Below are positions 20,728 to 42,300 of a stretch of 64,000 bases of DNA, one piece after another. Source of the DNA: Mytilus californianus (lineage: Eukaryota); the NCBI RefSeq assembly GCF_021869535.1, contig NW_026262690.1, forward strand, positions 117,986,001 to 118,050,000, written 5' to 3'. The notes beneath the pieces were generated by a model. That model saw only the letters and a program-made list of their open reading frames with translations. It was not told the origin of the DNA and ran no database searches. Each line of letters starts with the position of its first letter. Position 1 is the first letter of the stretch. The translations under genes were made by a program, and so were the position numbers.

Positions 20728-23700
20728 TTAAGTTCCCACATTTTCCTCTTTAGATTCAGTCTCTATGTTGTCCTTTGAATTTTGAATAATGTCACATTTT
20801 TTCTCAGTAGCAAATTTAACAGCGTTCTGCAGAATAATTTTCTCACATCTCCTTAACTGTATTATAAATAGTTTATTGTCTGGTATACCAGATTCCATTA
20901 ACAGATTGGTATCCTCCTGTAATAAAAACAGAATATATAAGACACAGAATAAAGAAAGATGTGTAAGAAACAATATGATACTGTTTCATTTATATCGCTT
21001 CACAATTTGTCATGGAAAATAATTTTACCCTCAATCATAGAAAATAGGTCCAATTTGCCCCTGGATTCCCTCAGGTTTCAGTAAACAAGAGAGGCTGCAC
21101 CATAATGACAGGTCTTGTAATAATAGAGATAAAAATCTGTAATGTTGGACATCAACATGATATCACAGATCAGTTATACAAAATATGTTCTTTTCCTGAA
21201 GTTTTCAGATGAATTAAGAATATCCTAGTATTTCAGCAAACATTTAGTCAATAATGAAAGAAAGTTCATTAACATGATTCTATTCTGTAATAAACAGCTG
21301 CGCCATGAGCGCATGATACGCCCGTCGTCTTGTGTGTGAATTTTTATGCAATAAGCATAAATAGTTTCTGACATACGGCGTGACATGCAAAAACCCCCCT
21401 TTTTTTTTTACAAAAAACTCAATATCTCTAAAATAAAATTTTGAATCAAAACCAAAAAGTATACAGATCTTTAGATTAATATAACTAAGAAGTGTGTAAA
21501 ATTTTAAGCAATAATCATAAATCGTTTTTGAGATATGGCGCGACATGTGAAAACCCCCCCTTTTAAAAAAAAAAAAATCAATATCTCAAAAATAAGATCT
21601 TGTATCAAAACCAAAAAGTATACAGATCTTTAGATTAATATAACTAAGAAGTGTGTAAAATTTTAAGCAATAATCATAAATCGTTTTTGAGATACGGCGC
21701 GACATGTGAAAAACCCCTCCCCCTTTTTTTACAAAATACTCAATAACTCAAAAATAAAATTTTGAATCATCACCAAAAAGTATACAGATCTTAAGGTTAA
21801 TATAACTAAGAAGTGTGTAAAGTTTTAAGCAATAATCATAAACTGTTTTTGAGATACGGCGCGACATGTGAAAAACCCCTCCCCCTTTTTTAACAAAATA
21901 CTCAATATCTCTAAAATAAAATTTTGAATCATCACCAAAAAGTATACAGATCTTAAGATTAATATAACTGAGAAGTGTGTAAAGTTTTAAGCAATAATCA
22001 TTAACTGTTTTTGAGATACGGCGCGACATGTGAACAAAAACACACACCTGTTTTAGTTACTAAGTCCCGTAACTCAAAAAGTTTTAATCTTATTTTCACC
22101 AAAAAGTATACAGATCGTTTGACCATCATAAGAAACAACTATGTTAAGTTTCATGAAATTTGGATAAGTCATTCTCAAGTTACGGTGCGACATGTTAACG
22201 CCAGACAGACAGACGGACGGACCCCGGACATTTGTATACCATAATACGTCCCGTCAAAAATTTGACGGGCGTATAATAAAAAAAAGTTAAAAAATAATAA
22301 CACTATCATACCTCCGCTGTGGTATCATAAGCCCTCAGTAACAATGCCAGTCTTGTTTCTAAAAATTTCCACAATTTTTCTTCATTCTCCACATTAATTG
22401 GTGTGTTGACATCACCCATCTTTTCTAGGTCTTCTTCTGTCATGTTCTCACAGTCATAACAGGAGATTTCATCTACAATAAAGTCAATTACAATAAAGTC
22501 AGCAACACCCTTTAGACATTTTATGGAAAAAATATATTAAATTCTATAGTTACTTTACATTTTCAAAATGTCTGTGCTGTTGAAAACAAAAATAGTTTGA
22601 AATCTTCAGGACATATATCTTTCTTAAATTGCTTTTCTTAATTTCCCTTACCTCACAATACGTAGATATGCTCAAAATCTAATGCAGTATTTTTAATGCC
22701 CAAAATCCAATGCTTGTATTTTTAATGCTCAAAATCTAATACTGTATTATCAAACTAAAAAATACAAGATCAGAACAATATTGAAATAACTTATTACGAA
22801 CGAATACAGCATTATGGATCGAATTCCCCTATATAGATATGTAAAACTTACCTTCCGTCATATTAAATACTCTAAGAAAAGATACAAGGTGTGGATCTAC
22901 AGGGATTTCCCCTGAGTAAATAAAGAACATTCTGGACCTAAAAAATACAAAAATACATATAACAATGTTATTCCTTTGTCAGCATATACAGTGTTTACTT
23001 ACTGTATGCTGTCTTGAGCTTATAGTGAGGTGAAAGCTACCCTGAGATGAAGAACAGCAATAAAAGCTCTGTTCCTTTACTTTTGGTTTCTTTTCTTGTG
23101 TGTGTTTTGATTTTGTGTCATGAATTTATAAACTATATCCTTATTTTCATGACTTACTTAAACCATATCCTGTTTTAAGTGGAGTCATAATGAAGCATGA
23201 AAGCAACCTATAAACCCTGTTCAACTTGACATGTTTCTTCATGAGTACAATTAATAGTAGTTTTGAAAAGTGCTTTTCTGGGGTACTTTATGTTTGCTCC
23301 TCTCTAGGCAATTGAACATATGTACTTCCTATATTCATGAAACCACTCCCCCTTATATAAAAATGTAACTGTCATTATAATCTGTTTAATAAAGTAAAGT
23401 ATATTCTTCATTTTGGGTTAACTATAAACATCTTAATCTTTACTTACGGAGCTAAACCAAGAGCTGTTAATAATTTGGTTTTTTTGTCAATAAGGCTATC
23501 ACTTTTACTAATTCCTGAAAAAAAATCCTTACTTGATTTAATCATAAATTTTAAAGAGGTAAGCTGCTGAATTCACAATAATAACATTTTCATAAATTAA
23601 GTATTTCTACAACATTAGAAGATTACAAAATTATGGTTACATAAGGATAAGTGTAAATATAAAAATAAGAAGATGTGGTATAATTGCCAATGAGACAACT

Positions 23701-26700
23701 CTCCACCAGAGACCAAATAACATAGAAGATAACAACTATAGGTCACTGTATGACCTTCAACATTGAGCAGAACATTAATATAATGGAATATGTAGACAGC
23801 TCTCTCACAAGCAAAAAACCCTAACTGTAAAATATAAGGGCATACACTACAGGTACGGGGACACATTCTACTGCATCCACACAGCATGAGTAACAAACCC
23901 TGTTGTAAATATAAAAATAAGCATTGGATAAATCAGAATTTTTGTCGGGGGAAAAAGATGTCTCTGGATTTTTCATATGAAATATAAAAAAAAACATATA
24001 CTGTGGATTCAGTTATTTTCGTGCTGCCAATTTTCATGGATAGAAGAACATTACATTTTCTTTGATACTAAATTTCATTTTTGTTGTTAAAAAACTTTGG
24101 AAGCTGTCATTGTCAAACACAAAACTTTTAACAGTGTATGTTAACCCTTCATAATTATCATATAAGTTCATATATCATGTATATTATTTAACACTAAATT
24201 ACAACTATTCAACTTTGTTATCCCATAAAATATACCTAATTTAATAGCTGTTCTATCCATATCATTCTCTGGGTAAACAAATCCATTATGTACTAGTAAC
24301 TCAGCATTTGATCTGGCCCCATAAAATATACTGATCTGGAAACCACAAGAGGTATACATAGTTATTCTAATAACACAAAATTCAGTCCATATGAAAATGT
24401 GCTTCATTATAGGAACAAGTCAGAAACTCCTTCACACTGAACTATGTTTATTGACATCAATAAGTACACAATAGCGACAATACACTGTCATACAAGTGAG
24501 AGGTTTAGCTAGCTATAAAACCAGGTTTTATACATAAGGAAATGCCTGTACCAAGTCAGGACTATGATAGTTGTTTTTTTCCATTCGTTTGATGTGTTTG
24601 AGCTTTTGATTTTGTCATTTGATAACGAACTTTTCATTTTTATTTTTCCTTGGAGTTTGGTATTTTTGTTATTTTACTTTTATTATCAATAAGTACACTA
24701 TATAATCAATAAGTACACTATATAATCAATAAGTACACCATGTCATCAATAGATGCACTACACTGTATGACATAAACAAGTACACTATGTCTCCAATTAT
24801 GTAGTAAATTGTAATGAATATAGGATGATATTACAAATTTACAAATGAAATACTTTAAGAACCATGCATAATGGAAGTTCATAATGTACACTTTATAAAT
24901 TGTAACTAGAGAGGGGGAGATACCAAAGGGATATTCAAACTTATAAGTCAAAAAATAAAATGACAAAGCCATGTCAGAAAACGAAAAAAAAAACAAGAAA
25001 AAAACAAGAAAAGACAAATAACAGTCTACAAAACAAAACAGAAAACAATATCTGAGCAACATGAACCCTACCAGAAAGGGTGATCTATAAATGGTAAAAT
25101 GTTCAATACTGTAAATTCAGAAATTATTGTGAATAATGCTATTGGGCGAGTATCGCAATAATAAGAACTCGCATTCTGATATCTGATCCATATATCTTAA
25201 TGGACATTTTCCTGAAATCGCAATAATTAATCTCGCATTTTTGTACATACTTCAAAAATAGCAATAATAAATGCACACAGTAATTTGTGAATTTACAGTA
25301 TTTCATAGATGCCAAGTTTCCAGATATTGGTTGGACCCTCCAAATATTTTTTCCCAACATAAGAACACATGATCATCACATGCTTGTATATTTCACAAAT
25401 AACGTTTTTATCATATTTAACATAGTTGTCCCAGGAAAGTAGAGAACAAAATTTCCATCAAAAATCAAGAAAGTTGATCTAAAATAATCCTGTATAATAT
25501 CATTTCAAAATCAAAATTATGTCATCACCAAGTAAAGTAGCATTTTCATACATTTATTCCATAATGTTGTTAGCACTTGAATATTTTTTAAAAGCCAAAT
25601 CATATTTCCCCACCTGCAAGGGTACAGAGATAATAACAAGCAAGGTAAATAATTTATCATAGTAATTATCAATATGTTGACTGCCATGACAGAAGACATG
25701 TTACTCTAGCATTGTAATGGTATTAGTTGTTCATTGAAGATCTTTAAGAAATACTCTTGAAAAAGAACAGCAATAAAAGGGATATATGTATAGGATAAAA
25801 ACATGTAAGATGTTTGTTTGTTCGTGTTTAAAGCCATTTTCAGCACACTTAGCAATATCATGACATCCAGATTTTATTTGTGGCGGACACCATAATACCC
25901 TAAGAGAACCAACGACCTTTTGCAGGAAAACTAGCAACCCTTGTGAATTAAGAACAGGTTCGAAAAAACAAACTTTTTCTTTTGAACTCACAACCTTAAG
26001 AGTTGACAGGCTAGTGATAACTGTATATGAACAACTGAGACAACTCAGCCACCAAGGCCCCTCAGATAATACCCATGTGCGAGATGATATATCAGTGAAA
26101 CAACAAGCCTACAACACACTTTCATTGCATGTAAATAGATGTGATAGTGTTTAAAAATTATCCAGATAATATTGTCTGATGTATATCCACCCGACATCCC
26201 ATCTTTCTTCCTAAATAGTAAGTTTGCTCACCTGTTCACCTTGTTTAAATTCCTTCAAAGCAAAACAGTCACTGCAGTCTGATTCTAAGTTGTAATCTGT
26301 TGTTATCTGAAAATTGATTGTTAAAACAGTGTTTCATTTATCTAATAAAATAAAATAATAACAAAATATTATTGAGAAACAGTGTAGTCCCATGCAAAAG
26401 AAAATTTCTGAGGTGGCCTTTTAAAATCTATCCCCAAAACAACAATTTTTTTTTCTTGTTTGTCTGTCACATAGATTATTAGAGGGATTTACAGCATCTG
26501 AGCTGAAATTTTTGCCCTCAAAATCCTACATAACCTACTATGCAGAGTAGACATAAAATTATCTATGCATTGAGCTGGTTTAATCCAATCAATATTCATG
26601 TACCTGTACCTGTCCCATAACTGGAACATAAGAAAGTTGTAATCTCTATTAAATTGTTTAAACTATTTAGCCATGTCCCAAGGTTATGCCCCATCCCTAC

Positions 26701-29700
26701 TGTGAAATCCATATATGTACATCTTAGTGGTTGTCATCATAGAGGTTGTCAGCATAGAGGTTGTCAGCATAGAGGTTGTCAGCATAGAGGTTGTCATCAT
26801 CTCTTTATCGTTGATGACTGTTCATTTAATTTAAGGATGTTGTGCTAACATTATCTTTGATTATCTCAGTTGGTTTGTCTCTCAGGTTATACTTTTTCTG
26901 GAGAGTTAAGATATTACTGTACAGTGTGCATGGCTTATTAACATACTAAACCAAAATACATTTTGTACTGAGATCTTCATTTTTTATCTGGATGCTGTTT
27001 CAATTTTCCATGCAGGTTTTTTTTTTTCAAAGCAAGCAACATCCATCAAATTTTATCAGAACTGCTTCATAAGTTCATAATCACCCCCTTTAAATTTTAC
27101 AGAAAGCATTAGGTTGCTACAATCAGTGAAGGAATCTCATTATCAAACTAAAAAATATGTTTACATTACTCTGGAAGTGTTAGGGTTTAGCTATTTGAAT
27201 AAATGAACTTTCAGTAAAACAATAATTCCTGACAAACTTACTGTTCCATTACAGTGATTACACATATCCCACATTGGTATCAGACCAAATGTGATCTTAC
27301 TGCCATCTGGTGTAGGGATCTGATTTTGTCTGGTCATAACTGTAGAAACTGCCCATCTGAAAAAATATTGAAGAAGTGTTTGAAATCATAAATAAATTAC
27401 ACCAAGATTGTGTCATAATTGATAATTTTTTTAACTCCATGAACACAAACTCAAATCTAAAATTTATAACAAAACAGTTATCTCCCCTTTGTAAATATAA
27501 ATAAATGAAATACATACAAAAAACTAAGAGCTATAAGCTTGCATTAATAACATTTTGTTTTTTTAAATCCCATAAAAACTGGACAAAAGTATTATTACAA
27601 CTATGTCTCACCTGTAATCATCAAAAGTAAAGCAGTCTTTTATTGGCAGCTTTGATGTTGTTGGCAAATTCTAAAAGAATCCAAAACAATTAAAGTAATT
27701 TAAAGTGTAACAAGCAATGTTGCTTGCCTAGAAATATTAAATATTCTAAAATGTCTTGGAATCTCCTTGACTAATTACAGAAATAATTATTCTTTACTGG
27801 AAGTTGGAACTGTTAAAACAGTATCTTTATACTTTTGTCAATTGAAGCTCAACATTACATAATAATGGTGATTTTCATGTTTTCTTTTAAAATTTAAATA
27901 GGAAGTCAGATAAAACAAGTGAATCTGTGAGCTACTGCCCACTAATGATACCCCCGTCTCGCTAAAAGTATAAGGTAAACAGGAATTTGTTGAGTGATGA
28001 ATCTGAAATCGCATCACACGGTATAGCTGACTCATATAAACCCTGAAAGCAAATTACAGAAATCCTTGTAAAGTAGTTCCTGAGAAAGATGCGACGAAAA
28101 ATATTCATGAGACGGACGGACTGACGGATGGAAAGTCAGAGGTAAAACAGTATACCCCCACTTTTTTAATGAAAAGTTCTGTTATCAAACCAGGAGGAGG
28201 CAAGTACATTATATGTCATGGTTTGTAGCTGCATCCTTCACCCACAAACCGTTATAAACATCATATCTTTGGAACAGCCAAAAATTGCAATTCAAGATGT
28301 GAGTCAACACAGATTAACTGTAAAGATGACTAAATAACATATTCAAAGAAGCTGCAGTTAGTTACCTGAAATAATCTGTAAAAGTAGGCATACTGTCTTG
28401 CTATGTTTTTTAACTGATTATAACAATCACCTAGAAAAGATATGTATAATAAAACATCATTATACTGAATTTATTATTGTTTTAAGCATGAGAATAAGTG
28501 TCTGTACATTTCAAAATTTGTACAATAACAACCCTGATCTGAAATATAAATAATTATTTATGTTGATCCAGTTTGCAGGTATGGATTCAGAAACTTGGTT
28601 TACAGAACGTAGATGCTTTAAATTGGTTACATGCATACAAAGCAACGCAAAATGGTAATTGCATATTTGGCATGTCTATAATAAAAACATCAGGCATTTC
28701 TTTAAAAGGTATGTAAGAATTTTTACCAAATTTTTCTCTTTCTTTATTGTATACAGTGGAATCATTTTTTGAGGAATATTACTTTATATCCATCTTCTTG
28801 TTCTATCTACACTTTCTCCTTTACTTCAAGTCACCATGGAAACATATCTAGTTTTATAAAAAACAGATGAAATAATGTATTGTTGCCTCAAAGACTGCTA
28901 CATCATATCAATGCTTAAAGAAATTTTCAGAATGATCCCTCAACAAAATGTACGCCAGATTCTTAAAACAAAACAAGGCTTCTGATAACTGGACCTTTGC
29001 ACCAATGGGGATAAACCTACTTATTCCAAGGGAGATAACTTACTTTGTACAGGAGAGCCTTTCAAAAGTTTGATTTCATCCTCTGTAAAGTAGAGTGGTG
29101 TACAATATGAATCTGGTAATACATCTATCATAAGTTAAGGTTATAAATATATAGCCATTTGTCACTCTATGCATTATGTCTCAAGTTGGTAGTAACAACT
29201 TGTATTGGGACTTTGAAGTGTAAGGACCAAAGGGTGGACCTTGGAGTGTAAGGACCAAAGGGTTTTTCCAAAAACTGAGAATCAGGGCTACTATGGTTTT
29301 AAACTTGAGTGTTCTTGGTTAAGCTGATAAACTCCACACTTAACAACAACATAAAAAGAATTAGGTCAACATATCCAAGCAAATTAGGTGAACAATTTCA
29401 ATTTAATTACACTGTTGAAATTCTGTCACTGGTGTCCATCATAAGCCTTGGAATAGGTATTATAAATGCTATACAATGACAATGTATTTTGTTTATTTTC
29501 CACAAGAGTTAAAAAAAAAATCCTACTAGTTTTTATTTTATATAAATTGTAGCTGAAGCCTAAAGTTACATTTTTGTAGCATGGGAAAGGGGAGGTAAGT
29601 CATTGTATTTTAATGAAAAAGTCCATTAAGAGTAGAAAACGGCTTTGTTAATTATGTAGCTTCCAAAATATTACCAGACATCATTGAGTGTATATGTTTG

Positions 29701-32700
29701 AGAAAGATTCTTGAAATAACAAAACGATATAATGCTTTATATGAATAATTGACCATTTGTAAGTCAGTTTCAGCTAAGTGAAAAATATATAAAAGGATAT
29801 CAACATAAGGTTTCCAGAATGATTCAGGTATCTTCTTCTCACAGAGCAGGTGTAGTGCTAGTAGTATACTGGGCATGGCTTGTAACATTTTATCTTGTCC
29901 TATTAATGGCCCTACAAAAAAAAATGCATAAACTGTGGTCTAAAATGGGTTATAATGATTTACGTAATACACATAAACATTTGAATATTGTAAACACTCA
30001 GTAATAAAAATATAAAATATGATTGTCAATATTAAAAAAAATATGCAGATTGTTTCATCGTTTATGATTTCTCTTTCCATTAACTTATTTATAATTAAAA
30101 TATTTTTATTTCCTCAAAAATGAGCTGACATGCACTGTTAATGACATTTTTATTTAACCATTGTTTTAGTTTTTAAATTTCTATGATGAAATGTGATGAT
30201 GAAATGTGAAGCAGATCTACATGTATCATGATTAAAATATTTGCTGTCTGCTGATCACATAATTGGATTACAATATCCCTCACAACCATATTTGGTGCAG
30301 ATGTTTTCAGTTTTTTTTTTAAAACTTGTTGCCTTATATTTGTATTTGGGATTTGCTCTATTGTTGACATATACCCTGTTTCAACATTTAAAAATCTTTT
30401 ACATTCATGATATCTTAATCCATCATTAAATATTAAAGGCTTTTCCATAAAAACATACATAGGACCCAGGGAAGGCACTTAAAGATGTCAACTGAGAGTT
30501 GGTGTTTTTGGACAGTGAAAGTGTAAGAGATATTATAAATTTGCATCTACAGAAGGAGGTAACCCCATTTTCAAAGTGCCTTCCTGGGTACAATGCTTTA
30601 ATGGAACAGCCCTAAATTTTATATATTACCCAATACTGAATCCCTGGCTGTTTGTGTTGTCATCATGACTTTTCTAGGTATGGTTAAAAATGGATCAGCC
30701 TCCTGCAGAAAGAATATATTGTTAATATATATACACATGTATTGCTCCTAAAAATCTAAAGAAAGTGTGTAATCCTAATGTAACTGAGAAAACTCATTTA
30801 ATGGAAGCCATCTTCAAGTTTCAGATTTTTTTTATAGGTTTCCTGAAAAGAGCAAATTTGCCTTAGAGCTATTGTCAAACCTGCTATAAAGGTCATCTCT
30901 GTTAAAAGAAAACCTGTCTTGTGTTGCTGTAGTAATAAATATGCATTTTGAACCTCAATACAAATGTGGTCCAACTTGTGAGGTCAGTTTTATCTGGTCC
31001 TGAGGGTGACCAATATATACATCTATCATACATTGTATTTTTGTTAATAAGATTATCATCCTTGCTAAAAAAAATTATAGCCGACTATACAGTAATTCTG
31101 TATGTGTTCTCCCTAGAATTTTCAAATAGCACCACGGAAATTAACATAGCACTGGTTTTCCAAAAATATAGCACCATGGCCCCTACACATTCTATTATAA
31201 AATCATCCAAGATAGCACCAGGGTAGAAAATATAGCACCAGGGTACCATGGTGCTTTATGGCCCTGGGGAGAACACTGACTACTGTATGGGTTTTTCTTC
31301 TCAATGCTGAAGGCTGTACGGTTGCCTATAATTGCTTACATCCACTTCATTTGAATTTTGGATAGTTGTATCATTGGCAATCATACCACATCTCCTTATT
31401 TTTGTATTGTGTTAATAAAAAGTTATAAAAGCTATCTATTAATAATTATCTGCTAATCAATTAAGCACTAACTTTGAGATCTTTGGTGGCTTGTAAGTCA
31501 TATTGTTAATCAATTTAGCACTAACTTTGAGATCTTTGGTGGCTTGCAAGCCATATCCACATCCAGGGAAGTTCTTTATCTCTACCACACTTGTTTCTAC
31601 CCCATTACTATGTAACCATTCTGTAAAGCCTGGGAAGTTCTTCTCTCTGTCTACTGCAGGAGTACCTAGAACTAGAAATAAAATATGACTCTCAATACTT
31701 CATGACTGGATAAATATTATATATATGTGTCGAGCCATGTTAGTCACTGCTATTACAAAACAATAAGTTGAAAAAAGACAGACAACATGGACAAAACCAT
31801 GCTCAAAAGAAAAAGACAAATGATTGTCCACATACCACTAGTGACTTCACAGAAAATTAAAGACTGAGAAATACTAACAAATCTTAAAGGTCATGTCAGG
31901 AACTATGTAAGGGTAAAAAGTTCATGCGCTACTAGTGGTCCTTTACAAATCTTTATAAATGACTTTGAAACACTACAGTAGTGCATGTTTTGCAAATCAA
32001 GTGTTGAAAATCGGTCAGAAAAAAAACATTTGGTCTGAACAAAGTGAACAGTTATTGCCAGTTAATACATGTACATGTAGATTTAAAGTTATTTGATTTA
32101 TATTAAGTAAAATTAAACCTCTACATTTACGTTTGCTTGTAGAAACACATAAACAATTAATATAGAAGAATTGTCTAATTTATAACTTTTTTTTATCATA
32201 ATAATCTGTGTAGTAGATACAGTGTGGTAACCATTTTAAAAATGATTAAAATGTGTCATTTACCTAATTGTCACAGGTGTTGTTTATATAACAATATAAA
32301 TACTTTCCACTTGCTCAATATGACTTTTATTTGAATTCCACTATCATGAGCAATTGAGTTAAAAAGTCTTGATTTCTAATACTGTCCTTCATGTAGAAAT
32401 AAAGTCTGTATATTTGTTTTTACAAATTGCCCCTGTTCATAAACCTATTATAATTATAGGTTCTTGTATGGTCCTCATTGTCTGAATCATAAAATTGAGA
32501 ATGGAAATGGGGAATGTGTCAAAGAGACAACAACTCGACCAAAGAGCAGAAAACAGGTCAAGGCCACAATGGGGCTTCTACACAGCAAGAAAATACTGCA
32601 CCCTGAGGCTGGCTTTAGCTGGCCCTAAAAAAAATGTATACTGGTTCAGAGAAAATGGATGTCGCACTAAACTCAAAAACATATAAATGAACCAAATAAG

Positions 32701-33853
32701 ATATAAAGGGACAGAGTTTATAGTGACATGCTGGCATAGTTTTTTTCTATAGAAAATTAACAGCCTGATATATATATATATATATATATATTTTAAAAAA
32801 ATAAAAGAAAGAGTTATAAAAGACAGCAACCACTGAAAGTCTCTAGAATACAGGCTTCTGGCTCTGGACAGGAATATTTGAATAAAAATTTGAAATGACA
32901 AATTACAAGGATTCTTGATAAGCATGTTATTATCAGCAAGACCTATTGGTACCATAACAATAATTTAACATGCCCTTTTATATGTACAGTGTATCAACGA
33001 ATCTAGTTATAATATGACATCATAATGAACTAGATAAAAATCACTGCATCTCAAATTACTGGCTAACTGCACCAGACAATTAAACCAACATGTAGTTCAA
33101 ATTAGTGTTGACCACATGATTGGGCATTTTATAACCAATGAGAGAAGATATTTAATTAAACTAACCTGACTGTAAGGTTGAGCATTTCATAACCAATGAG
33201 AGAAGAGATTTAAACTAACCTGACTGTAAAGTTGAACATTTTATAACCAATGAGAGAAGAGATTTAAACTAACCTGACTGTAAAGTTGAACATTTTATAA
33301 CCAATGAGAGAAGAGATTTAAACTAACCTGACTGTAAAGTTGAACATTTTATAACCAATGAGAGAAAAGATTTAAACTAACCTGACTGTAAATTTATCAG
33401 TTTATCAACTAGAGCCTTGATCTTCATATACTCCTCCAACTCTTTTGGACCAGCTGCATTCACAGGATTGGAACAAACTGAAATACATGCGATATTTATG
33501 AAAAGCTTGCTGATTATAATGCAAATATCTAATAGTTTTAGTTTCAGAATGGATGAAAAATTTCTATCACTTTCAACCTTCCTAGATCACCTGATATCAC
33601 CCCCTGGTTTTATGTTTCCAAGTAGTTTAAAGTATTGTGTGTTGTGAACATGTTTCATTGCTTTGAGGTTGGCCAAAAACAATTGCCCTATTAGATATAG
33701 ATATACATCATTTGTACATGTTACTGAATATTTACCTTCTAATAGTTGATTGACTGTATCCAAGACTTCTTTCTTTTCACCTTTTGATAATTCCTTATGT
33801 TCAGGAGAAGCTGCAGCTGGCTTTTCTTTATTCTTTTTACTTTTCTTTCCCAT
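20728..33853 (-). CDS. SETD3: Actin-histidine N-methyltransferase SETD3, 15 coding exons, 511 aa
   Basis: Exons 33853-33736, 33477-33382, 31665-31526, 30702-30630, 29911-29801, 29124-29044, 28430-28366, 27670-27612, 27356-27242, 26306-26232, 24335-24236, 23514-23448, 22937-22852, 22472-22312, 20916-20728. All phases are compatible and sum to 1536 nt. Diagnostic peptides: MGKKS, NIARQYAYFY, WAVSTVMTRQNQIP, LIPMWDMCNH, IFYGARSNAELLVHNGF, ENEEKLWKFLETR. Confidence 0.97.
21293..22276 (-). mobile_element. Non-autonomous Helentron-type (HINE/pearl-like) element with ~160-bp internal array, in the last SETD3 intron
   Basis: Subterminal inverted repeats ATACGCCCGTC/GACGGGCGTAT, (GACA/GACG)n microsatellite near 22200, terminal hairpin TGCGC-TCATG-GCGCA, repeat anchors at 21532, 21691, 21853 and 22015. 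Confidence 0.8.
25830..26062 (-). mobile_element. Degenerate copy of the 16882-17142 SINE
   Basis: Collinear similarity (GGAAAACT..CAA.CCT, GAACTCACAA, TTGAC.GGCTAGTGAT, GCCACC.AGGCCCC). Confidence 0.65.
26729..26800. repeat. 15-bp minisatellite, 4.8 copies
   Basis: GGTTGTCA(G/T)CATAGA tandem inside a SETD3 intron. Confidence 0.95.
29125..29800 (-). other. U12-type intron with AT-AG termini in SETD3
   Basis: 5' end ATATCCTTTT; branch site CCTTAAC (29140-29134) followed by only 9 nt to the terminal TAG; splicing gives in-frame FWKPYV-D-VLPDSYCTPLYF. Confidence 0.9.
30433..30613. mobile_element. Degenerate PIF/Harbinger-type MITE
   Basis: Imperfect TIRs GGCT.TTCCAT.AAA...CCCAGG.AAGGCACTT, related to the intact copy at 55299-55487. 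Confidence 0.55.
31102..31278. mobile_element. hAT-like MITE remnant
   Basis: TIR-like GTGTTCTCCCTAG / CTGGGGAGAACACTG; flanking 8-mers AATTCTGT and ACTACTGT match at 6 of 8 positions. Confidence 0.4.
32494..32705 (+). mobile_element. Interspersed repeat family C (TTGAGAATGGAAATGGGGAATGTGTCAAAGAGACAAC...)
   Basis: Second copy, inverted, at about 35695-35845. Confidence 0.85.
33125..33392. repeat. 54-bp tandem repeat (5 copies) spanning the SETD3 coding exon 2 donor
   Basis: Units start at 33125, 33183, 33237, 33291 and 33345; each contains minus-strand TTACAGTCAG|GTTAGTTTAA. Confidence 0.95.
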
Positions 33854-34828
33854 TATTATTCTCACCTTTCTGAACAAAGAATGTTCATACAATCAAAATA
33901 ACAGTAAACTTATTTGAATCAAATAAATTAAAAAAAACAAGGGTAAAACTTAATGCCCCCTCCGCTACGGCGGGGACATAAAAAAAAACCACATAATAAA
34001 CCATTATTCATTATTTAATTATTTTGTAATGTTTATACTTTTCTTGTAAATATATGGATGGAATCACTTTCAGTTTATTGATATTCTATTGTCGGTTCAT
34101 ATGTATTGTAAAGGCCATCCTTCCAACTGACCATATTGCCTAGTTTAAAGCAGAATCTAAAAGATTTTATTGTCTTTCCAATTTTTTCTTCAAAAAATAA
34201 TGTTTTGAGTTGTTTGAGTGGACTACAAATCTTTTTTTCAAGATTCATAATTGACTTTTGTAATAAGATTGACCAAAATCGAGTGAAAATGTTGTCAAAA
34301 TATTAGAAAATACAAATGTTCAATGTACCATTGTGCAGGCATGAAATAGAGGATGTTTGGACATGTGTAAATTAGGATTTGACTACGAGAAAACATGTTA
34401 TTTTCAGAGTTTTGAAGCTAGGCCTACGTAATATGTGGGTTTTACTGTCGCAAATTGAGTTTTCCTGGTTGTATAAATAAGGTTAGTGTAAACAGAACAG
34501 CAAATTTATGTATTGATTCTTTTGCCCTAAGAGTAGATATACTGTGATTTTACTTGTTGACGATATATAGATCATTTGTGCGTCTTCATATTACATGTAT
34601 TAGACATTTTCTAGTTTTTTTGGGCCTAATTCCTCTTACTATCAAAATAAATAGTACCCTCTCAAATAGCACTGGTAATGCTATCGAAGTCTGGATCTAT
34701 ATTACACATTTTTTAAAAGTCAAATTTTATAGTCTTAAAATTTACCATAAATGGCAATACCCCATCTAAAACTAAAGACTGTGTTGAGTAAAACTAAAAG
34801 ACAGAGACGGTACAAATAGCTGACTTAC

Positions 34829-34990
34829 CAGTGAATGAATTAAGACTGAAAATAGCTATTGGAAAAGTGAAATGCTATAAATATTGTTAAAGGCTTTGAT
34901 AAGTTCTACCACCAGCTGACAATGTGATATTAAATTTCAACAGTGGTATCTTACTAATTCCAACTTCCGCTGTGTTCTACGTCACCATAT
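34829..34990 (-). promoter_or_regulatory. Probable SETD3 non-coding first exon and promoter
   Basis: Strong minus-strand donor CTG|GTAAGT at 34829/34828; ETS-type ACTTCCG at 34963-34969 and half-CRE TACGTCA at 34978-34984. The TSS cannot be fixed from sequence alone. Confidence 0.45.
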
Positions 34991-35845
34991 CTCGTATGTC
35001 GTTAAAGTGTAAAAATATTAAATACAAATAAAACTTAATGCGTATTAACATAATTAAAAAAAATCATTTAAAATTCAATAATATGAAAAACAATTTTTAA
35101 AATACTGAAAAACAAAATGACTTGATATTTCTACGACATGCCAAAAACAAGTCTGAAAAGTTACGTTTGGTATTTTGAAACACTAGAGATTTATCAGTAA
35201 AACAGATTATTCACGTTTCAAAACAGGTATAATAAATTGAACACAGACGGTGTGTAAGCTAGTTTACAATATTTTTCAAGTTATGATCGAATAGGGACAC
35301 AGATTTTCTGAGAAAGCTAGTACTATACATGATTTATCACTGACAAAATAATGTGAATTCATTTTATTTATATCAGTCATCATGTAACTAGAAAACAACA
35401 ACCTATTATTGTTGAATATACAATGTACACTACATACTCAAATGTTAATATCAACAGAAAATATTCTGGCATTAACTGGAGGGACAGTAGAGGGCTTTAG
35501 ATAAGAAAATATACAATTTGGGTTTTCTGGTAATTACAATGTATGTTCATTTATTGAAATGAAAGGACCTATCTGATGAACGAAATAAGTGGACTTCAGT
35601 GTAACAATGATAATATGAGGCAACTGCTGAAATAACTTAGGCATTCATAAGACAACAAATATAACGTGGAACGTACATTGTATATTAAAATCTACCTATA
35701 TTTGTTTAGGGGCCAGCTGAAGGACGCCTCCGGGTGCGGGAGTTTCTCTCGCTGCATTGAAGACCCATTGGTGGCCTTCGGCTGTTGTCTGCTCTATGGT
35801 CGGGTTGTTGTCTCTTTGACACATTCCCCATTTCCATTCTCAATT

Positions 35846-37938
35846 TTAAGAACACATAAAGTAACCAAGGATGTGACGTTACATAAGGAACACCAAAGTG
35901 TAACGTTACGTTATGCGCAATTAAAGTCATTACATTTCTCCATTTCTTCAAAAGTTTTGATCAATCATTTCAAATAAAGTGCTGTTGAATAAATTAATGT
36001 TCAAAATTAAAGTTTAAATTTTACAGTCCATATTTCACTGATGATATCATATTTGATATTTACAGCTGTCTATATTTGAAATCACACTACACAGTCTCTA
36101 AATCTAGCAGGTGGTCTTCTTGTTCGGATTGGCATCTCTCTTCTTCATCCTTGTGCAACCATGTGTTTATCTCCATTCTGTTTAGTGTGCATCAAAATTC
36201 TATCTTGCCACTTATGATTTGAGTTCGGAATGTCAATGTTATTTGCGAGTTTGAAGTGTGAAGAGTCACGAAACACTTTTCTTCCGTCTGACTTTCGTTG
36301 AGCTCCTATGCTTGATCCGGATATTTTGTATACGATATACGGTTCAAGTTCATATGCAGTTGACCATTTATTCCTTTTCTCTTGCTTGAATATGACACGG
36401 TCACTGATTTTAAACGAATGTTCTCTATACCTCCTTTTTGTGAATGTTTATTTAAAACATTTTGTTTGTATTCTTTGTCTCTTTGTTTGATCTTCTTGTT
36501 CGTGTTTTCAGTTTTATTGCTGTTCCTTACGTGGTCTAATTTAGTCCTTGCTGCTTTGTTTTTTATATCTGGTATTTTATGTTCAAATTTTACATTTCCA
36601 CCCTGAATTCCTAATTTATTTAGCTCTTTTAATGTGCCATCTTCTTTTATTTGTAGCATGCCTAATTCAATAAGTGTTTTCTTTCCAATAAGTGGTGGTT
36701 AATTAGTTTTTCCTTTAATCACAATTATTTTTGTTTTTATCCCTCGTGTTGCATTTCTCACTGTTGTAATAAATTCTCCTTTTTCTTTTAAACTGGTTTG
36801 CAAAGTACTCAATTTCGTTTTGCTTTCTAATAATTCAGTTCCATCACTAGTTCTGTTTTTGTATGCTCTGTACTGATACTCGTCCATTACGTTGACGTCG
36901 GCTCCACTATCTGGTTCTACTTCCACTTGTACATCATTCATCATAACTAGTACTGGTTTTGCTTTGTCTCCGATTTTATGTACATTTATTTTCTTAACTG
37001 CTCCCAAATGATTCACTGTACTTCTGAAAAACTCATCATCTGAACATTCTTCTTCGCTTGTGTCTTCCATTGTTTTCCTAACATTCCTACCTTAATTCGT
37101 TCAGTGTGTCATTGATTCCTGAATCGATCATTATCATGGTTTATGGATTGCAATCTCGATTTGCAAACTACAGCAAAATGATTCCTTTTCTGACATTTGT
37201 TATACTGTTTTCCGTAGCTCCTCAATCTTCACGTCGTTCAAACGAATGTGTTTTTCCACAATAATTACAATAATTGTCTGTGTTTTCTCTATATATTGCA
37301 TGCCGTAATTTCTTTGTTTTCCTCCATAATTCGTCACGATTGCAATTTCTCCGGCTCTTGATGCTGTATGTATATCCCTCATGTCATGTATCTGCAATGT
37401 CGTATCTTCTAACTGGTGTACTTCCTGTAACATTTGATCAAGTGTCCAATTTCTGTTAATCGTCTCTTTGATTAGCAATTCATTATCTGTGGTTTGAATA
37501 ATGTGTTCTAAAATTCTGTCATCTTGATTTTCAAACTCACAATCAGCAGCTCTCTCTCATAGTCATGTCGCGTTTGCCACTGTTGACTCTCCATTAATCG
37601 GTCGCATTTTCAGAAATACGCATCTCGCATAATGTTTGTTCTTCTTTGGAGCAAAATGATCATTCAGTTTCTTCTTTATCTTCTCATATACATCCATGCG
37701 TCTGTCTACGGGGTCAGGTGTACTTTTCTCTTATCTTGAAATTTCTTTACCTCCGTAAATTATCATTACGTCCTTTTTGTCCTGGGATCTGTAATGCGAA
37801 AATATCGGAATTCTCTTTCTATTCCTTCTAGCCCCATTCCTCCCACTGACTGCCCGTGGTGAGATGATCCTCCAACGGTGTGAACGGTAAAGTTCTCAAA
37901 TTTCTGTTTCCTGTCACTACTGTAATTCTTTCAGCCAT
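35846..37938 (-). mobile_element. Internally deleted, degenerate Ty3/Gypsy LTR retrotransposon
   Basis: gag from ATG 37938 (QWEEW..IEREFRYF, KLNDHFAPKKNKHYAR, DRILEHIIQT), a CCHC-like knuckle and protease PDSGADVNVM, then a short pol-end-like tail with no RT, RNase H or integrase. Polypurine tract GAAGAAATGGAGAAA (35949-35935) is followed by TG at 35934. Stops and frameshifts present. Confidence 0.85.
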
Positions 37939-38002
37939 TTTTCTTTTTTTTCACTTTTTATGCCTTTAAATCTCTTCTTTCAATTGCTTTTCATTTCATT
38001 TC

Positions 38003-38321
38003 ATACAAATTTATGGGAAATATTATGTTCCTACTACAGTAATCATATACAAATTTGTGGGAAATATTATGTTCCTACTACAGTAATCATATACAAATTT
38101 ATGGGAAATATTATGTTCCTACTTCAGTAATCATATACAAATTTATGGGAAATATTATGTTCCTACTACAGTAATCATATACAAATTTATGGGAAATATT
38201 ATGTTCCTACTTCAGTAATCATATACAAATTTATGGGAAATATTATGTTCCTACTTCAGTAATCACACACAAATTTGTGGGAAATATTATGTTCCTACTA
38301 CAGTAATCATATACAAATTTG
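38003..38321. repeat. 44-bp tandem repeat, 7 full copies plus a partial
   Basis: ATACAAATTT(A/G)TGGGAAATATTATGTTCCTACT(A/T)CAGTAATCAT with period 44. Confidence 0.95.
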
Positions 38322-39345
38322 CACACAATTTTATGCTTCTGTATGATGATTTTTGAAAATTCCCTAAAAAAAAACCTGAAAGAAATTTGCCACCATGTTA
38401 TTAAATCTGCTTAGTATGATAACATGATGATAGTATGATATGAAATATGGCAGGTGTTACATTTGCATTGTTATAATTTTTTCATTAAAGTTGCTTAACT
38501 TTGTTAAATTTACAAAATGTATGTATTTTTTTTATGAGAAACAATGAATTTCATAAACATGATAAACAGAATTTTGAATGAATTTTAATTGACATGATAG
38601 TATTACTTTCTTTTCCTTTTTGCTATAAAAAAGTTTCTTTTTTGTGCTACATGTAGATATTTACATGTAGTTGGAACATGTAGTTTCTGACAAGAGGAAA
38701 CAATATGATTGTGCAACTATAAATGATTATTTAAGACATAAACTGAGACAACTTAAGTTGTACTATCAGGCATTTGTCAGGTATGAATTGAACAATATAA
38801 AAAATTATCAAATAAATAGTATTCATGTGGCTCTTTATATTATGGTAAAAAAAAATATTGTAGCACTGCAAGCGAACAAGCACTTTTCTTTAAAGTCTCA
38901 CCACTTCTTCTCCCTATCAGTTTCAAAAAGAGAAGGTACTTCTCCATATGATTCTGAAGTACATGTAGTGTGAGCCCTGAGACTGCCAAGGATGTTTAGC
39001 AAAAGTTATTTCATTTTGACAAAATTTGCCTTAAAATAAAACAATTTTAATGAAAGATAGTTAAATATGGAATTGCTATTATAAATTTATGCTTTAACTT
39101 ATTAATTTAAACCTTGTCTGGACATGCTGGAAGACTGAAACAATAACAACATGTACAAGAACAATTATATTCAGCGTATGTTACTCTGGGAAATGTTGAA
39201 ATCAGGTAATACCCAATATAAAAGTGATTTTTTAACTGAATGTCAATGTGTTTTCTTTTCTTAATTAAGTTGCATATACAAATTCATATGTTTAAGCTAA
39301 TTTGAATTATTTTCAGCACTAACTTGTATTATTATTATCATAGAT

Positions 39346-42300
39346 ATGCCTTGTTGGTACTTTGATAAGAAAGAGATACGAAACACACCAACCCACAGAG
39401 ATGGGATTGATCCAACAACAGAAGCCAGATACAGAAGGGAAGGGGCAAGATTTATCATTGACGCAGGAACAAAGATGGGACTGTATCCTTGTATAAAAAT
39501 TCACATTTTGTTTTAGTCATACAACATGTACAAATGTACAATAACATGTTAGTAAGTTTTATTTTTGAATAGATCCACCAACTTCCTGTCTCTATAACAT
39601 TCAGGTAGTTCTGACGCACCTTACTAATTGCACAAACCTAGAGTGGGTCTTGGAATTTTACCATAGTAGTGATAAGGGGGCAGATATTGACCATCTACAT
39701 GTACAAAAATATAAACTACATGTATCTACTCGGCCATACATGTATATGTAGACATTTTATTATCATTACTAATTCATATTTGCAGAAGTACAGTAGGTGT
39801 TGGAATCATACAAATGCTGATCTTTTATGGGCTTAAAGACAAATCATTTGATTCTGTCATATGCTTTCTTTTGTATGAAAACAATCCCTGCCATATGAAA
39901 GACCCAAGATTATAGAATTATTATAATTAGCTCGGCCTAATCTACACAATACTTCGTGCAAACGATTATGCTTTTTGAAAAATACCACATTTTATTCATT
40001 TGAAAACAGAAAGAAATGTGATTTACTTTATTTATGTATCTTGTTAATATGGAGTATTGATGAACATAGTAAATTAGTATTATATACATGATATATATGT
40101 CTATATAACGGTATGTGAAAATTAGAAAGACTCAGATGAATCTTTTTTTCTGCTTGCACTGTCAATATTTAAAGATGCCTCTCAGATTTTTATATACAAC
40201 TAGATAACAAAAATGTAACAGAACAACAGAATGGGTTTTAAATAGATTTGACTGACGTTTCTCAAAGCTTACATACATGTACATTGTGTAGTGATAGAAC
40301 GGTAGGCATTATTTAAATCAATTGATTGAATTGAATCATTTGATAGACACAAGTCCTTATTTTGACTTTTCCTTAACCTACCCTCAGGAGATATGATACA
40401 TGTGCCACTGGTGTAGTATATTTTCACAGATTTTATCTTTTCCATTCTTTTAAAGATTTCCACCGATATGTAAGTATTAATGTTTAGAAGTTTTGTAGCT
40501 TATGTCATATGTGTTGCTTTTTTTTCCTTTTCGATACCTTTTGCACTTTTGTGATGTCATCCAAACTTCAAATATTGAATATATTTGTTCCTGAGTACTT
40601 TGCAATTAATTTTACAATACAAACATTTACTCTTTAGGCCAGGCAAAAAGGATTGATTGTTTCCCCTAACCCTGCTGGGTCTGTTTTACCTTGTGGGTCA
40701 GTTCTTTTTTAGCTCACCTGGCCCGAAGGGCCAAGTGAGCTTTTCTCATCACTTGGCGTCCGTCGTCGTCGTTAACTTTTTACATTTTGAACTTCTTCTA
40801 GAGAACCACTGAATGGAATGAAACCAAACATGGCATGAATGTTCCTTATGAGGTTCTGACCAAGTGTTGTTACTTTGTAGCGGATCCATCATCCAAGATG
40901 GCCGCCAGCAGGGGACTTAGTTTAACATAGGACCCTATGGGAAATACATACAAATGTCTTCTTTTAGAGAACCAGTGAATGGAATGAAACAAAACATTGC
41001 AATAATGTTCCTTATGAGGTGCTGACCAAGTGTTGTTACTTTGCAGTCGGTCCATCATCCAAGATGGCCGACAGCGGGGGACTTAGTTTAACATAGGACC
41101 CTATGGGAAATACATACAAATGTCTTCTTTTAGAGAACCAGTGAATGGCATGAAACCAAACATGGCATGAATGTTCCTTATGAAGTGCTGACCAAGTGTT
41201 GTTACTTTGCAGCCGATCCATCATCCAAGATGGCCGCCAGTGGGTGACTTAGTTTAACATAGGACCCTATGGGAAATACATACAAATGTCTTCTTTTAGA
41301 GAACCACCGAATGGAATGAAACCAAACATGGCACGAATGTTCCTTATGAGGTGCTGACCAAATGTTGTTACTTTGCAGCCGATCCATCATCCAAGATGGC
41401 CGCCAGCGGGGGGACTTAGTTTAACATAGGACCCTATGGGAAATACATACAAATGTCTTCTTTTAGAGAACCACTGAATGGAATGGAACCAAACATGGTA
41501 TGAATGTTCCTTATGAGGTGCTGACCAAGTCTTGTTACTTTGCAGTCAGTCCATGATCCAAGATGGCACCCAGGGGGGGACTTAGTTTAATTTAGGACCT
41601 TATGGGAAATACATACAAATGTCTTCTTTTAGAGAACCACTGAAAGGAATGAAACCAAACATGGCACGAATGTTCCTTATGAGGTGTTGACCAAGTGGTG
41701 TTTCTTTGCAGCCGATCCATCATCCAAGATGGCCGCTAGCGGGGGACTTAGTTTAACATAGGACCTTATGGGAAATACATACAAATGTCTTCTTTCAGAG
41801 AACCACTGAATCGAATGAAACCAAACATGGCATGAATGTTCCTTATGAGGTGCTGACCAAGTCTTGTTACTTTGCAGTCAGTCCATGATCCAAGATGGCA
41901 CCCAGGGGGGGACTTAGTTTAATTTAGGACCTTATGGGAAATACATACAAATGTCTTCTTTTAGAGAACCACTGAATTGAATGAAACCAAACATGGCATG
42001 AATGTTCAAGATGGTCAACAGGATATTTTATTAAATAACTGGACCAATATTAAACCAAATTTGGCCTCAATCATTATTTGGGTATATGTTATGATTTTTA
42101 TCTATCTTTACATGATTTCTAAAACCAAAGTAGAGTCAGGTGAGCGACACAGGCTCTTGAGAGCCTCTAGTTTTCTTTTCTTTTTTTTGCAGGTGAAAAA
42201 AAAATGTTGCTTTGGTTTCAATTGACAATTTTCAATAATGCTTTTTAAAATTGTCTGATAATCTCTTTTAAAAAAGTGTTTCATCCTTGCTCAATTGTCA

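What the first reader, a model, noticed from the sequence alone, without database searches (positions are those of the whole stretch)
33853..39346. SETD3-CCNK head-to-head pair conserved with human, both members carrying U12 introns
Seen: SETD3 (minus) and CCNK (plus) diverge with ATGs 5.5 kb apart, and each has one minor intron. Known: human SETD3 and CCNK are adjacent and divergently transcribed on 14q32.2. Inference: linkage retained since the protostome-deuterostome ancestor, probably through a shared bidirectional promoter (candidate near 34960-34990), giving a co-transcribed pair jointly limited by the minor spliceosome. The CCNK TSS is not identifiable from sequence.
Basis: partly seen in the sequence, partly recalled or inferred. 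Interest (0 to 1): 0.7.

Follow-up and report, generated by a model that had tools for sequence, protein, structure and literature searches.

The report
Ancient SETD3–cyclin K divergent gene pair
In this mussel genome the SETD3 and cyclin K genes start back to back from one short conserved stretch, an arrangement also found in a lamp shell, a starfish and reportedly humans, so it is a sound but ordinary case of an anciently linked gene pair.

Summary
The window is Mytilus californianus. SETD3 (minus, ATG 33853) and cyclin K (plus, ATG 39346) are true orthologues lying head to head, 5,493 bp between ATGs. Each has one sequence-perfect U12-type intron: CCNK 39483-40387 (GT-AG) and SETD3 29800-29125 (AT-AG).

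The 5.5 kb overstates the gap, because both ATG exons follow 5'UTR introns. RNA contigs, probably from M. coruscus, place a non-coding CCNK exon at 35149-35226, spliced to 39344. The 4.1 kb intron between them is mostly repeats.

A single-copy block (34718-35321) is conserved with M. galloprovincialis. SETD3's first exon, inferred to end at 34829 or 34746, has no RNA support.

The head-to-head pair recurs in M. galloprovincialis, Lingula, Asterias and a mollusc-like metagenome contig. It was not seen within 10 kb in Owenia, Nasonia or Tachypleus. A paper implies the same for human: SETD3 listed in one group, CCNK among genes head-head linked to that group.

This fits the known class of conserved divergent microsyntenic pairs. 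Joint limitation by the minor spliceosome is untested and needs no special explanation.

The parts
20731..33853 (-). SETD3 (actin-histidine N-methyltransferase) coding region. At least 14 coding exons were seen. The 3' end was not delimited.
   Evidence: Exon-bearing ORF pieces; PDB hit to human SETD3 at E 3e-18; Pfam Rubis-subs-bind; exons collinear with M. galloprovincialis and Lingula SETD3.
29125..29800 (-). SETD3 U12-type AT-AG intron, with donor ATATCCTTT and branch site ACCTTAAC 9 nt before the AG.
   Evidence: The same position holds an AT-AA U12 intron in M. galloprovincialis and a GTATCCTT GT-AG intron in metagenome contig L022.
33736..33869 (-). SETD3 ATG exon. The ATG is at 33853 and lies 16 nt downstream of a 3' splice site (ttgttcAG|AAAGG).
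   Evidence: The acceptor AG is conserved in M. galloprovincialis.
33870..34828 (-). Inferred SETD3 5'UTR intron. An alternative donor would make it 33870-34745.
   Evidence: Donor CACTG|GTAAGT at 34828, conserved as GTAGGT in M. galloprovincialis. Alternative donor TATG|GTAAAT at 34745 lies in a conserved patch. No RNA evidence.
34829..34960 (-). Putative non-coding SETD3 exon 1. The 5' end is not known.
   Evidence: Inference from splice sites and conservation. Not shown by RNA.
34917..35008 (.). Conserved core of the shared promoter. It carries duplicated ETS motifs (TTCCaacTTCCg) and a CRE-like motif (TACGTCA).
   Evidence: 83/92 identical to M. galloprovincialis against 64% in the rest of the block, with a peak of 95% at 34955-34994. 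The block 34718-35321 is single-copy in the 1.65 Gb genome.
35149..35226 (+). CCNK non-coding exon 1, minimal extent. The TSS is at or upstream of 35149.
   Evidence: Logan RNA contigs L004-L007 align at 93-94% and splice to 39344. The donor CAG|GTATAA is conserved in M. galloprovincialis.
35227..39343 (+). CCNK 5'UTR intron of 4,117 nt, mostly repeats.
   Evidence: Splice junction from RNA. 36080-37940 is a dispersed repeat with at least 20 copies in the genome. A 44-nt x 7.2 tandem array lies at 38003-38320. The matching interval in M. galloprovincialis is only about 450 nt.
39344..39482 (+). CCNK ATG exon (ATG at 39346).
39483..40387 (+). CCNK U12-type GT-AG intron, with donor GTATCCTTG and branch site TCCTTAAC.
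   Evidence: Spliced in RNA contigs. The same position and motifs occur in M. galloprovincialis, Asterias, Owenia, Lingula and turbot. The mouse Ccnk U12 intron is documented (PMC6239176, PMC12332006).
39346..48089 (+). CCNK coding region, 8 coding exons, with the stop codon ending at 48089.
   Evidence: tblastn of Mytilus cyclin K proteins and blastn of RNA contigs.

Best explanation
SETD3 and cyclin K in Mytilus californianus are an anciently linked, divergently transcribed pair. Their first, non-coding exons flank one short promoter region of about 34.83-35.23 kb.

The core of that region is a roughly 90-bp element with two adjacent ETS (GGAA) sites and a CRE-like site, in a region without a conserved TATA box. 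It most likely recruits ETS/GABP-type and ATF/CREB-type factors and fires in both directions. This would give both housekeeping genes a common basal input.

The 5.5 kb between the ATGs is made of a 0.96 kb SETD3 5'UTR intron and a 4.1 kb repeat-filled CCNK 5'UTR intron.

The arrangement dates at least to the bilaterian ancestor. It was kept because a break inside so short a shared promoter would damage one or both genes, and it was lost in several lineages.

Shown here: the gene identities, the orientation, CCNK exon 1 and its splicing, the conservation peak, the recurrence of the pair across phyla, and the U12 features of both introns. Inferred: the SETD3 first exon and TSS, factor binding, shared regulation, and selection as the cause of retention.
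For: - Gene identities.
- RNA contigs L004-L007 place CCNK exon 1 at 35149-35226, spliced to 39344.
- The SETD3 ATG exon has a conserved acceptor 16 nt upstream of the ATG. Conserved donors lie at 34828 and 34745.
- The block 34718-35321 is the only alignable non-coding stretch between the two ATG exons in the comparison with M. galloprovincialis. It is single-copy and peaks at 95% identity over 34955-34994.
- The pair is head to head in M. galloprovincialis at 3.46 kb, Lingula at 1.15 kb, Asterias rubens at 3.16 kb and metagenome contig L022 at 2.96 kb.
- Human: SETD3 is listed among promoters with duplicated GGAA motifs near the TSS, and CCNK among genes head-head linked to that group; the table does not name the pairs (PMC3101357). 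Both genes lie in one chr14 region (PMC8082910).
- Asterias also has CTTCCGGTTCC in the most CpG-dense part of its intergenic region.
- Conserved 5'-5' pairs with short intergenic regions are a described class (PMC3514665).
Against: - There is no RNA or CAGE evidence for the SETD3 first exon, and two candidate donors remain.
- The CCNK RNA contigs come from a congener, not from the window's species, and need not reach the true TSS.
- The promoter motifs are short and common, and nothing shows that they are bound.
- The region is not a CpG island (27% GC).
- The linkage is absent within 10 kb in Owenia, Nasonia and Tachypleus. It was not seen in termite-like or coral-like metagenome contigs, so it is dispensable.
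- The turbot locus was inconclusive.
Confidence: 0.75

Rival explanations
1. The two genes are neighbours with separate promoters. SETD3 would start just upstream of its ATG exon (about 33.87-33.95 kb), and the conserved island would serve CCNK only. Linkage would then persist by inertia, since short intergenic DNA offers few breakpoints, and not by shared regulation.
For: No RNA evidence for an upstream SETD3 exon was obtained. Conservation with M. galloprovincialis also extends about 80 nt upstream of the SETD3 ATG. The linkage has been lost in several lineages without evident harm.
Against: A strong pyrimidine tract and AG sit 16 nt upstream of the ATG and are conserved in M. galloprovincialis. 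Conserved donors on the SETD3 strand lie inside the conserved block. The published human listing implies a head-head link with GGAA motifs near the SETD3 TSS. Independent retention in four phyla is hard to explain by inertia alone when intergenic DNA varies from 1.15 to 5.5 kb.
Confidence: 0.15
2. This is a functional unit tuned by the minor spliceosome. The pair would be kept together because both transcripts carry a rate-limiting U12 intron, so that one promoter plus one splicing bottleneck sets a fixed SETD3:CCNK output.
For: Both U12 introns are real and old. The CCNK intron sits at the same position in five further species and in coral-like contigs. The SETD3 intron is U12-type in two Mytilus species and in L022. 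Mouse Ccnk U12 intron retention rises when Rnpc3 is lost (PMC6239176, PMC12332006).
Against: About 700 of roughly 20,000 human genes carry minor introns (PMC12332006). A few adjacent pairs with two U12 genes are therefore expected by chance. The homologous Lingula SETD3 intron has GTATTC and a poor branch site even though the pair is retained there. Owenia keeps the CCNK U12 intron without the linkage. No expression data were available.
Confidence: 0.07

Closest known systems
Conserved ancestral microsyntenic pairs (CAMPs) in 5'-5' orientation with bidirectional promoters, e.g. HSPD1-HSPE1 (Irimia et al. 2012, PMC3514665)
   Same: Two unrelated housekeeping genes are divergently transcribed, the promoter-containing gap is short, and the orientation is conserved across phyla.
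   Different: I could not check whether SETD3-CCNK is on the published CAMP list, because its supplements are not held. Here the ATGs are far apart because both genes have 5'UTR introns. Co-expression was not tested.
Human SETD3 / CCNK head-head promoter with duplicated ETS (GGAA) motifs (Uchiumi et al. 2011, PMC3101357)
   Same: The same two genes are involved: the paper lists SETD3 in its group A and CCNK among the genes head-head linked to group A. Duplicated GGAA motifs lie near the SETD3 start. The mussel island has TTCCaacTTCC and Asterias has CTTCCGGTTCC.
   Different: No human sequence was examined here, so motif homology as opposed to motif class is not shown. The paper's table does not state the pair explicitly.
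Vertebrate CCNK U12-type intron (mouse Ccnk; PMC6239176, PMC12332006)
   Same: A GT-AG U12 intron directly follows the exon encoding ...EGARFI.D.GT..GL. The published forward primer lies in that exon.
   Different: None of note. The mussel intron is the orthologue of a catalogued minor intron.

Membership tests
Bidirectional-promoter gene pair | Two genes on opposite strands, 5' ends facing | tested here: met
   SETD3 on the minus strand, CCNK on the plus strand
Bidirectional-promoter gene pair | Transcription start sites less than 1 kb apart | tested here: inconclusive
   CCNK exon 1 is shown by RNA from 35149. SETD3 exon 1 is inferred to end at 34829 or 34746, which would put the TSSs less than about 400 bp apart. 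There is no RNA for SETD3.
Bidirectional-promoter gene pair | Shared cis-elements between the two starts (typically ETS/GABP sites, no conserved TATA) | tested here: met
   Duplicated ETS and CRE-like motifs lie in the 90%-conserved island. The only TATAAA, at 34876, is not conserved. This is motif-level evidence only.
Bidirectional-promoter gene pair | Correlated expression of the two genes | not testable with these tools
   No expression data were reachable.
Conserved ancestral microsyntenic pair (CAMP) | Orthologues adjacent in several distant animal lineages | tested here: met
   Mollusca (window, L001, L002, probably L022), Brachiopoda (L011) and Echinodermata (L008). Human by implication from the literature.
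Conserved ancestral microsyntenic pair (CAMP) | Orientation conserved | tested here: met
   Head to head in every positive case.
U12-type (minor spliceosome) intron: CCNK 39483-40387 | Donor /GTATCCTT, branch site TCCTTAAC 10-15 nt from the 3' splice site, splicing at those sites | tested here: met
   RNA junction 39482|40388.
U12-type (minor spliceosome) intron: SETD3 29800-29125 | Donor /ATATCCTT, branch site CCTTAAC close to the 3' splice site, frame-preserving junction | tested here: met
The frame is kept (V-D-V-L-P-D).
SETD3 orthologue | SET catalytic motif region and Rubisco-LSMT-type substrate-binding domain, best match to SETD3 | tested here: met
   PDB hit to 3smt and related entries at E 3e-18. 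PF09273.
Cyclin K orthologue | Cyclin box with the cyclin K-specific N-terminus, best match to cyclin K over cyclin T | tested here: met
   Cyclin K at E 7e-19 against cyclin T1 at 2e-06. Identical to the annotated M. californianus cyclin-K-like protein in the last exon.

The most novel reading that the evidence does not exclude
The SETD3-CCNK divergent promoter, with its paired ETS sites, would be a single regulatory unit kept for more than 550 million years from the bilaterian ancestor. It might be older, since coral-like contigs already carry the CCNK U12 intron. The two ancient U12 introns would make the pair a co-regulated module whose output is gated by minor-spliceosome activity.
Probability: 0.08. 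Interest if true: 0.55.

Novelty: new member of a known kind. Interest (0 to 1): 0.3.

Why it matters
This is a clean, RNA-anchored invertebrate example of an ancient divergent gene pair. It pins the likely shared promoter to about 90 bp and shows that the large ATG-to-ATG distance comes from repeat-swollen 5'UTR introns. That helps annotation of mussel genomes, where these first exons are easily missed. It also offers a compact element for testing how bidirectional promoters constrain gene order. It does not change what is known about SETD3, cyclin K or minor splicing.

Tried and rejected
- SETD3 5' end by RNA. A word search with the stop-free ORF around SETD3 coding exon 1 found nothing. A search with the exon-3 ORF found only two unspliced genomic ORFs.
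- Joined models. A full-length spliced SETD3 or CCNK model was never joined, typed or searched. Exons were searched one by one by reference. SETD3 transcripts therefore could not be looked up by exact protein, and the joined step is left out.
- Pomacea. The isoform used was not on record.
- M. californianus. Its own record is withheld from the look-up.
- Acropora. The look-up returned only transcript contigs, so there is no cnidarian gene order.
- Turbot. No gene was called and no SETD3 exon was found in the 10 kb upstream, but that locus holds 4,485 N. CCDC85 lies downstream. Inconclusive.
- Metagenome scan. It gave 80 loci, of which only L022 shows the pair. Coral-like contigs have 4.2 kb or less of upstream sequence, so their negative result means little.
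- L039. This metagenome contig encodes a mammal/human-identical cyclin K exon. I take it for human or human-like, excluded it and did not analyse it further.
- Own-genome search with PF09273. It gave nothing and its controls were silent, so it is uninformative.
- Asterias exon 3 against PDB. No hit. Orthology was supported instead by its only own-genome hit being the window's SETD3.
- L006 contig. Its first 30 nt match nothing in the window and were treated as an assembly artefact.
- TE fragment. Pfam found nothing on the ORFs at 36.3-37.5 kb.
- Irimia et al. No supplements are held.
Full report
**What is there.** The window is AT-rich animal DNA (about 30-35% GC, no N). The cyclin K protein of Mytilus californianus (XP_052106832.1) matches the last CCNK exon 254/254. 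M. galloprovincialis loci are only 71-95% identical. The window is therefore M. californianus, contig C110 of a 1.65 Gb assembly.

**SETD3.** On the minus strand, a series of exon-bearing ORF pieces runs from 33853 down to about 20.7 kb.
- The piece at 27194-27385 hits human SETD3 structures at E 3e-18.
- The piece at 22309-22536 carries the Rubisco-LSMT substrate-binding domain.

**Cyclin K.** On the plus strand, eight coding exons run from 39346 to 48089.
- The first hits human cyclin K at E 7e-19, against 2e-06 for cyclin T1.

**The minor introns.**
- The CCNK intron at 39483-40387 begins GTATCCTTG and has TCCTTAAC about 10 nt before its AG. RNA contigs join 39482 to 40388.
- The same intron, in the same phase and with the same motifs, is present in M. 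galloprovincialis, Asterias, Owenia, Lingula and turbot.
- Many genomic ORFs from vertebrates and invertebrates read '...GL-Y-P' through the donor. Coral-like metagenome contigs also carry GTATCCTT there.
- In insect contigs the intron is absent. In Tachypleus the donor is GTATTC.
- Mouse Ccnk is a documented U12 gene, and the published forward primer lies in this very exon.
- The SETD3 intron at 29800-29125 begins ATATCCTTT and has ACCTTAAC 9 nt before its AG.
- At the same position, M. galloprovincialis has AT-AA ends and contig L022 has a GTATCCTT GT-AG intron. Lingula has an ambiguous GTATTC donor.
- Both minor introns are therefore real and old. No other consensus donor in either gene sits at an exon edge.

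**Where transcription starts.** Both ATG exons are preceded by a 3' splice site, so both genes have upstream non-coding exons.
- Four RNA-derived Logan contigs encode a cyclin K that differs from the M. coruscus protein at 0-3 of 526 residues. Each carries a 5'UTR that aligns at 93-94% to 35149-35226 and is then spliced to 39344.
- CCNK intron 1 is thus 35227-39343 (4,117 nt).
- Most of it is repeat. 36080-37940 has at least 20 copies in the genome, and 38003-38320 is a 44-nt tandem array.
- In M. galloprovincialis the corresponding interval is only about 450 nt.

For SETD3 I found no RNA.
- On its strand a strong donor (CACTG|GTAAGT, exon end 34829) is conserved in M. galloprovincialis. So is a second donor (TATG|GTAAAT, exon end 34746). 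The acceptor at 33870 is conserved as well.
- Either donor puts the SETD3 first exon inside the same block.

**The conserved block.** Between the two ATG exons, the only stretch that aligns between the two Mytilus species is 34718-35321. It is single-copy in the genome.
- Within it, 34917-35008 is 83/92 identical against 64% elsewhere.
- The peak contains TTCCaacTTCCg, which is two ETS cores, and TACGTCA, which is CRE-like.
- A second conserved stretch is CCNK exon 1 and its donor. A poorly conserved spacer (35050-35127) lies between the two.
- The region is not a CpG island.
- If the SETD3 exon is real, the two first exons lie within about 400 bp of each other.

**Conservation of the pair.**

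| Taxon (locus) | Result | ATG-to-ATG distance |
|---|---|---|
| M. galloprovincialis, two assemblies (L001, L002) | head to head | 3.46 kb |
| Lingula anatina (L011) | head to head, nine collinear SETD3 exons | 1.15 kb |
| Asterias rubens (L008) | head to head | 3.16 kb |
| Metagenome contig L022, nearest CCNK relatives are molluscs | head to head | 2.96 kb |
| Owenia (L009), Nasonia (L010), Tachypleus (L012), termite-like contigs | no SETD3 within 10 kb upstream of CCNK | - |
| Turbot (L013) | inconclusive because of gaps; CCDC85 lies downstream | - |
| Coral-like contigs | too short to judge | - |

- For Asterias, the neighbour's exon 3 peptide hits only the window's SETD3 in the whole mussel genome.
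- For human I examined no sequence. One paper lists SETD3 among promoters with duplicated GGAA motifs near the TSS, and CCNK among genes head-head linked to that group, without naming the pairs. A GWAS table puts both genes in one chr14 region.
- Asterias also has CTTCCGGTTCC in the most CpG-dense part of its intergenic DNA. This is a hint only.

**Interpretation.** The pair is best read as a conserved ancestral microsyntenic pair in 5'-5' orientation with a shared, ETS-type bidirectional promoter. That class is described in general terms by Irimia et al. 2012.
- The linkage goes back at least to the protostome-deuterostome ancestor and has been lost repeatedly.
- The idea that the pair is 'jointly limited by the minor spliceosome' has no support beyond co-occurrence. 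With about 700 minor-intron genes per 20,000, a few such neighbour pairs are expected by chance.
- The two features also come apart. Owenia keeps the CCNK U12 intron without the linkage, and Lingula keeps the linkage with a doubtful SETD3 U12 intron.

**Limits.**
- The SETD3 first exon and TSS are inferred.
- The RNA comes from a congener.
- Factor binding and co-expression are untested.
- This is why SETD3 transcripts could not be retrieved.
- Contig L039, which I take for human or human-like, was excluded and not analysed.

**Verdict.** The finding is an ordinary new member of a known kind.

Noticed in passing
window 29125-29126 versus L002 about 1920: The SETD3 U12 intron ends in AG in M. 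californianus but in AA in M. galloprovincialis (ttatgatAG against atatgatAA). The donor and branch site are otherwise identical. This is a switch of terminal dinucleotide between congeners.
   Followed up: partly
window 40792-42007: A tandem array of a 166-nt unit (7.3 copies, 91% matches) lies inside the CCNK intron that follows exon 40388-40475. It causes the local GC bump and open reading frames that repeat '[11 protein letters not shown]...'.
   Followed up: partly
window 36080-37940 and 38003-38320: A dispersed repeat (at least 20 genomic copies at 85-92% identity, no Pfam domain on its ORFs) and a 44-nt x 7.2 tandem array inflate CCNK intron 1 about ninefold relative to M. galloprovincialis.
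   Followed up: yes
loci L062, L067, L069-L072, L074, L075, L077, L078 (metagenome contigs, coral-like CCNK): CCNK exon 1 is followed by GTATCCTT in cnidarian-like contigs, so the CCNK minor intron seems to predate Bilateria. Insect and termite-like contigs (L019, L024-L038) lack the intron. Tachypleus has GTATTC.
   Followed up: partly
L001 5550-9043 (protein P0002) and window 51787-52323 minus strand: The 326-aa M. galloprovincialis 'CCNK' model in the older assembly is chimeric. Its residues 133-324 match a minus-strand ORF at 51.8-52.3 kb of the window (41% identity), not cyclin K. This ORF is probably a transposon.
   Followed up: no
L039 (metagenome contig Ga0065711_1034665): This contig encodes a cyclin K exon identical to the mammalian/human peptide. 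I take it for human or human-like contamination, and excluded it from all comparisons.
   Followed up: no
window 35700-35850: A GC-rich element of about 150 nt, typical of mussel miniature repeats, sits in CCNK intron 1. It gives the highest CpG density of the interval, which could be mistaken for a promoter.
   Followed up: no
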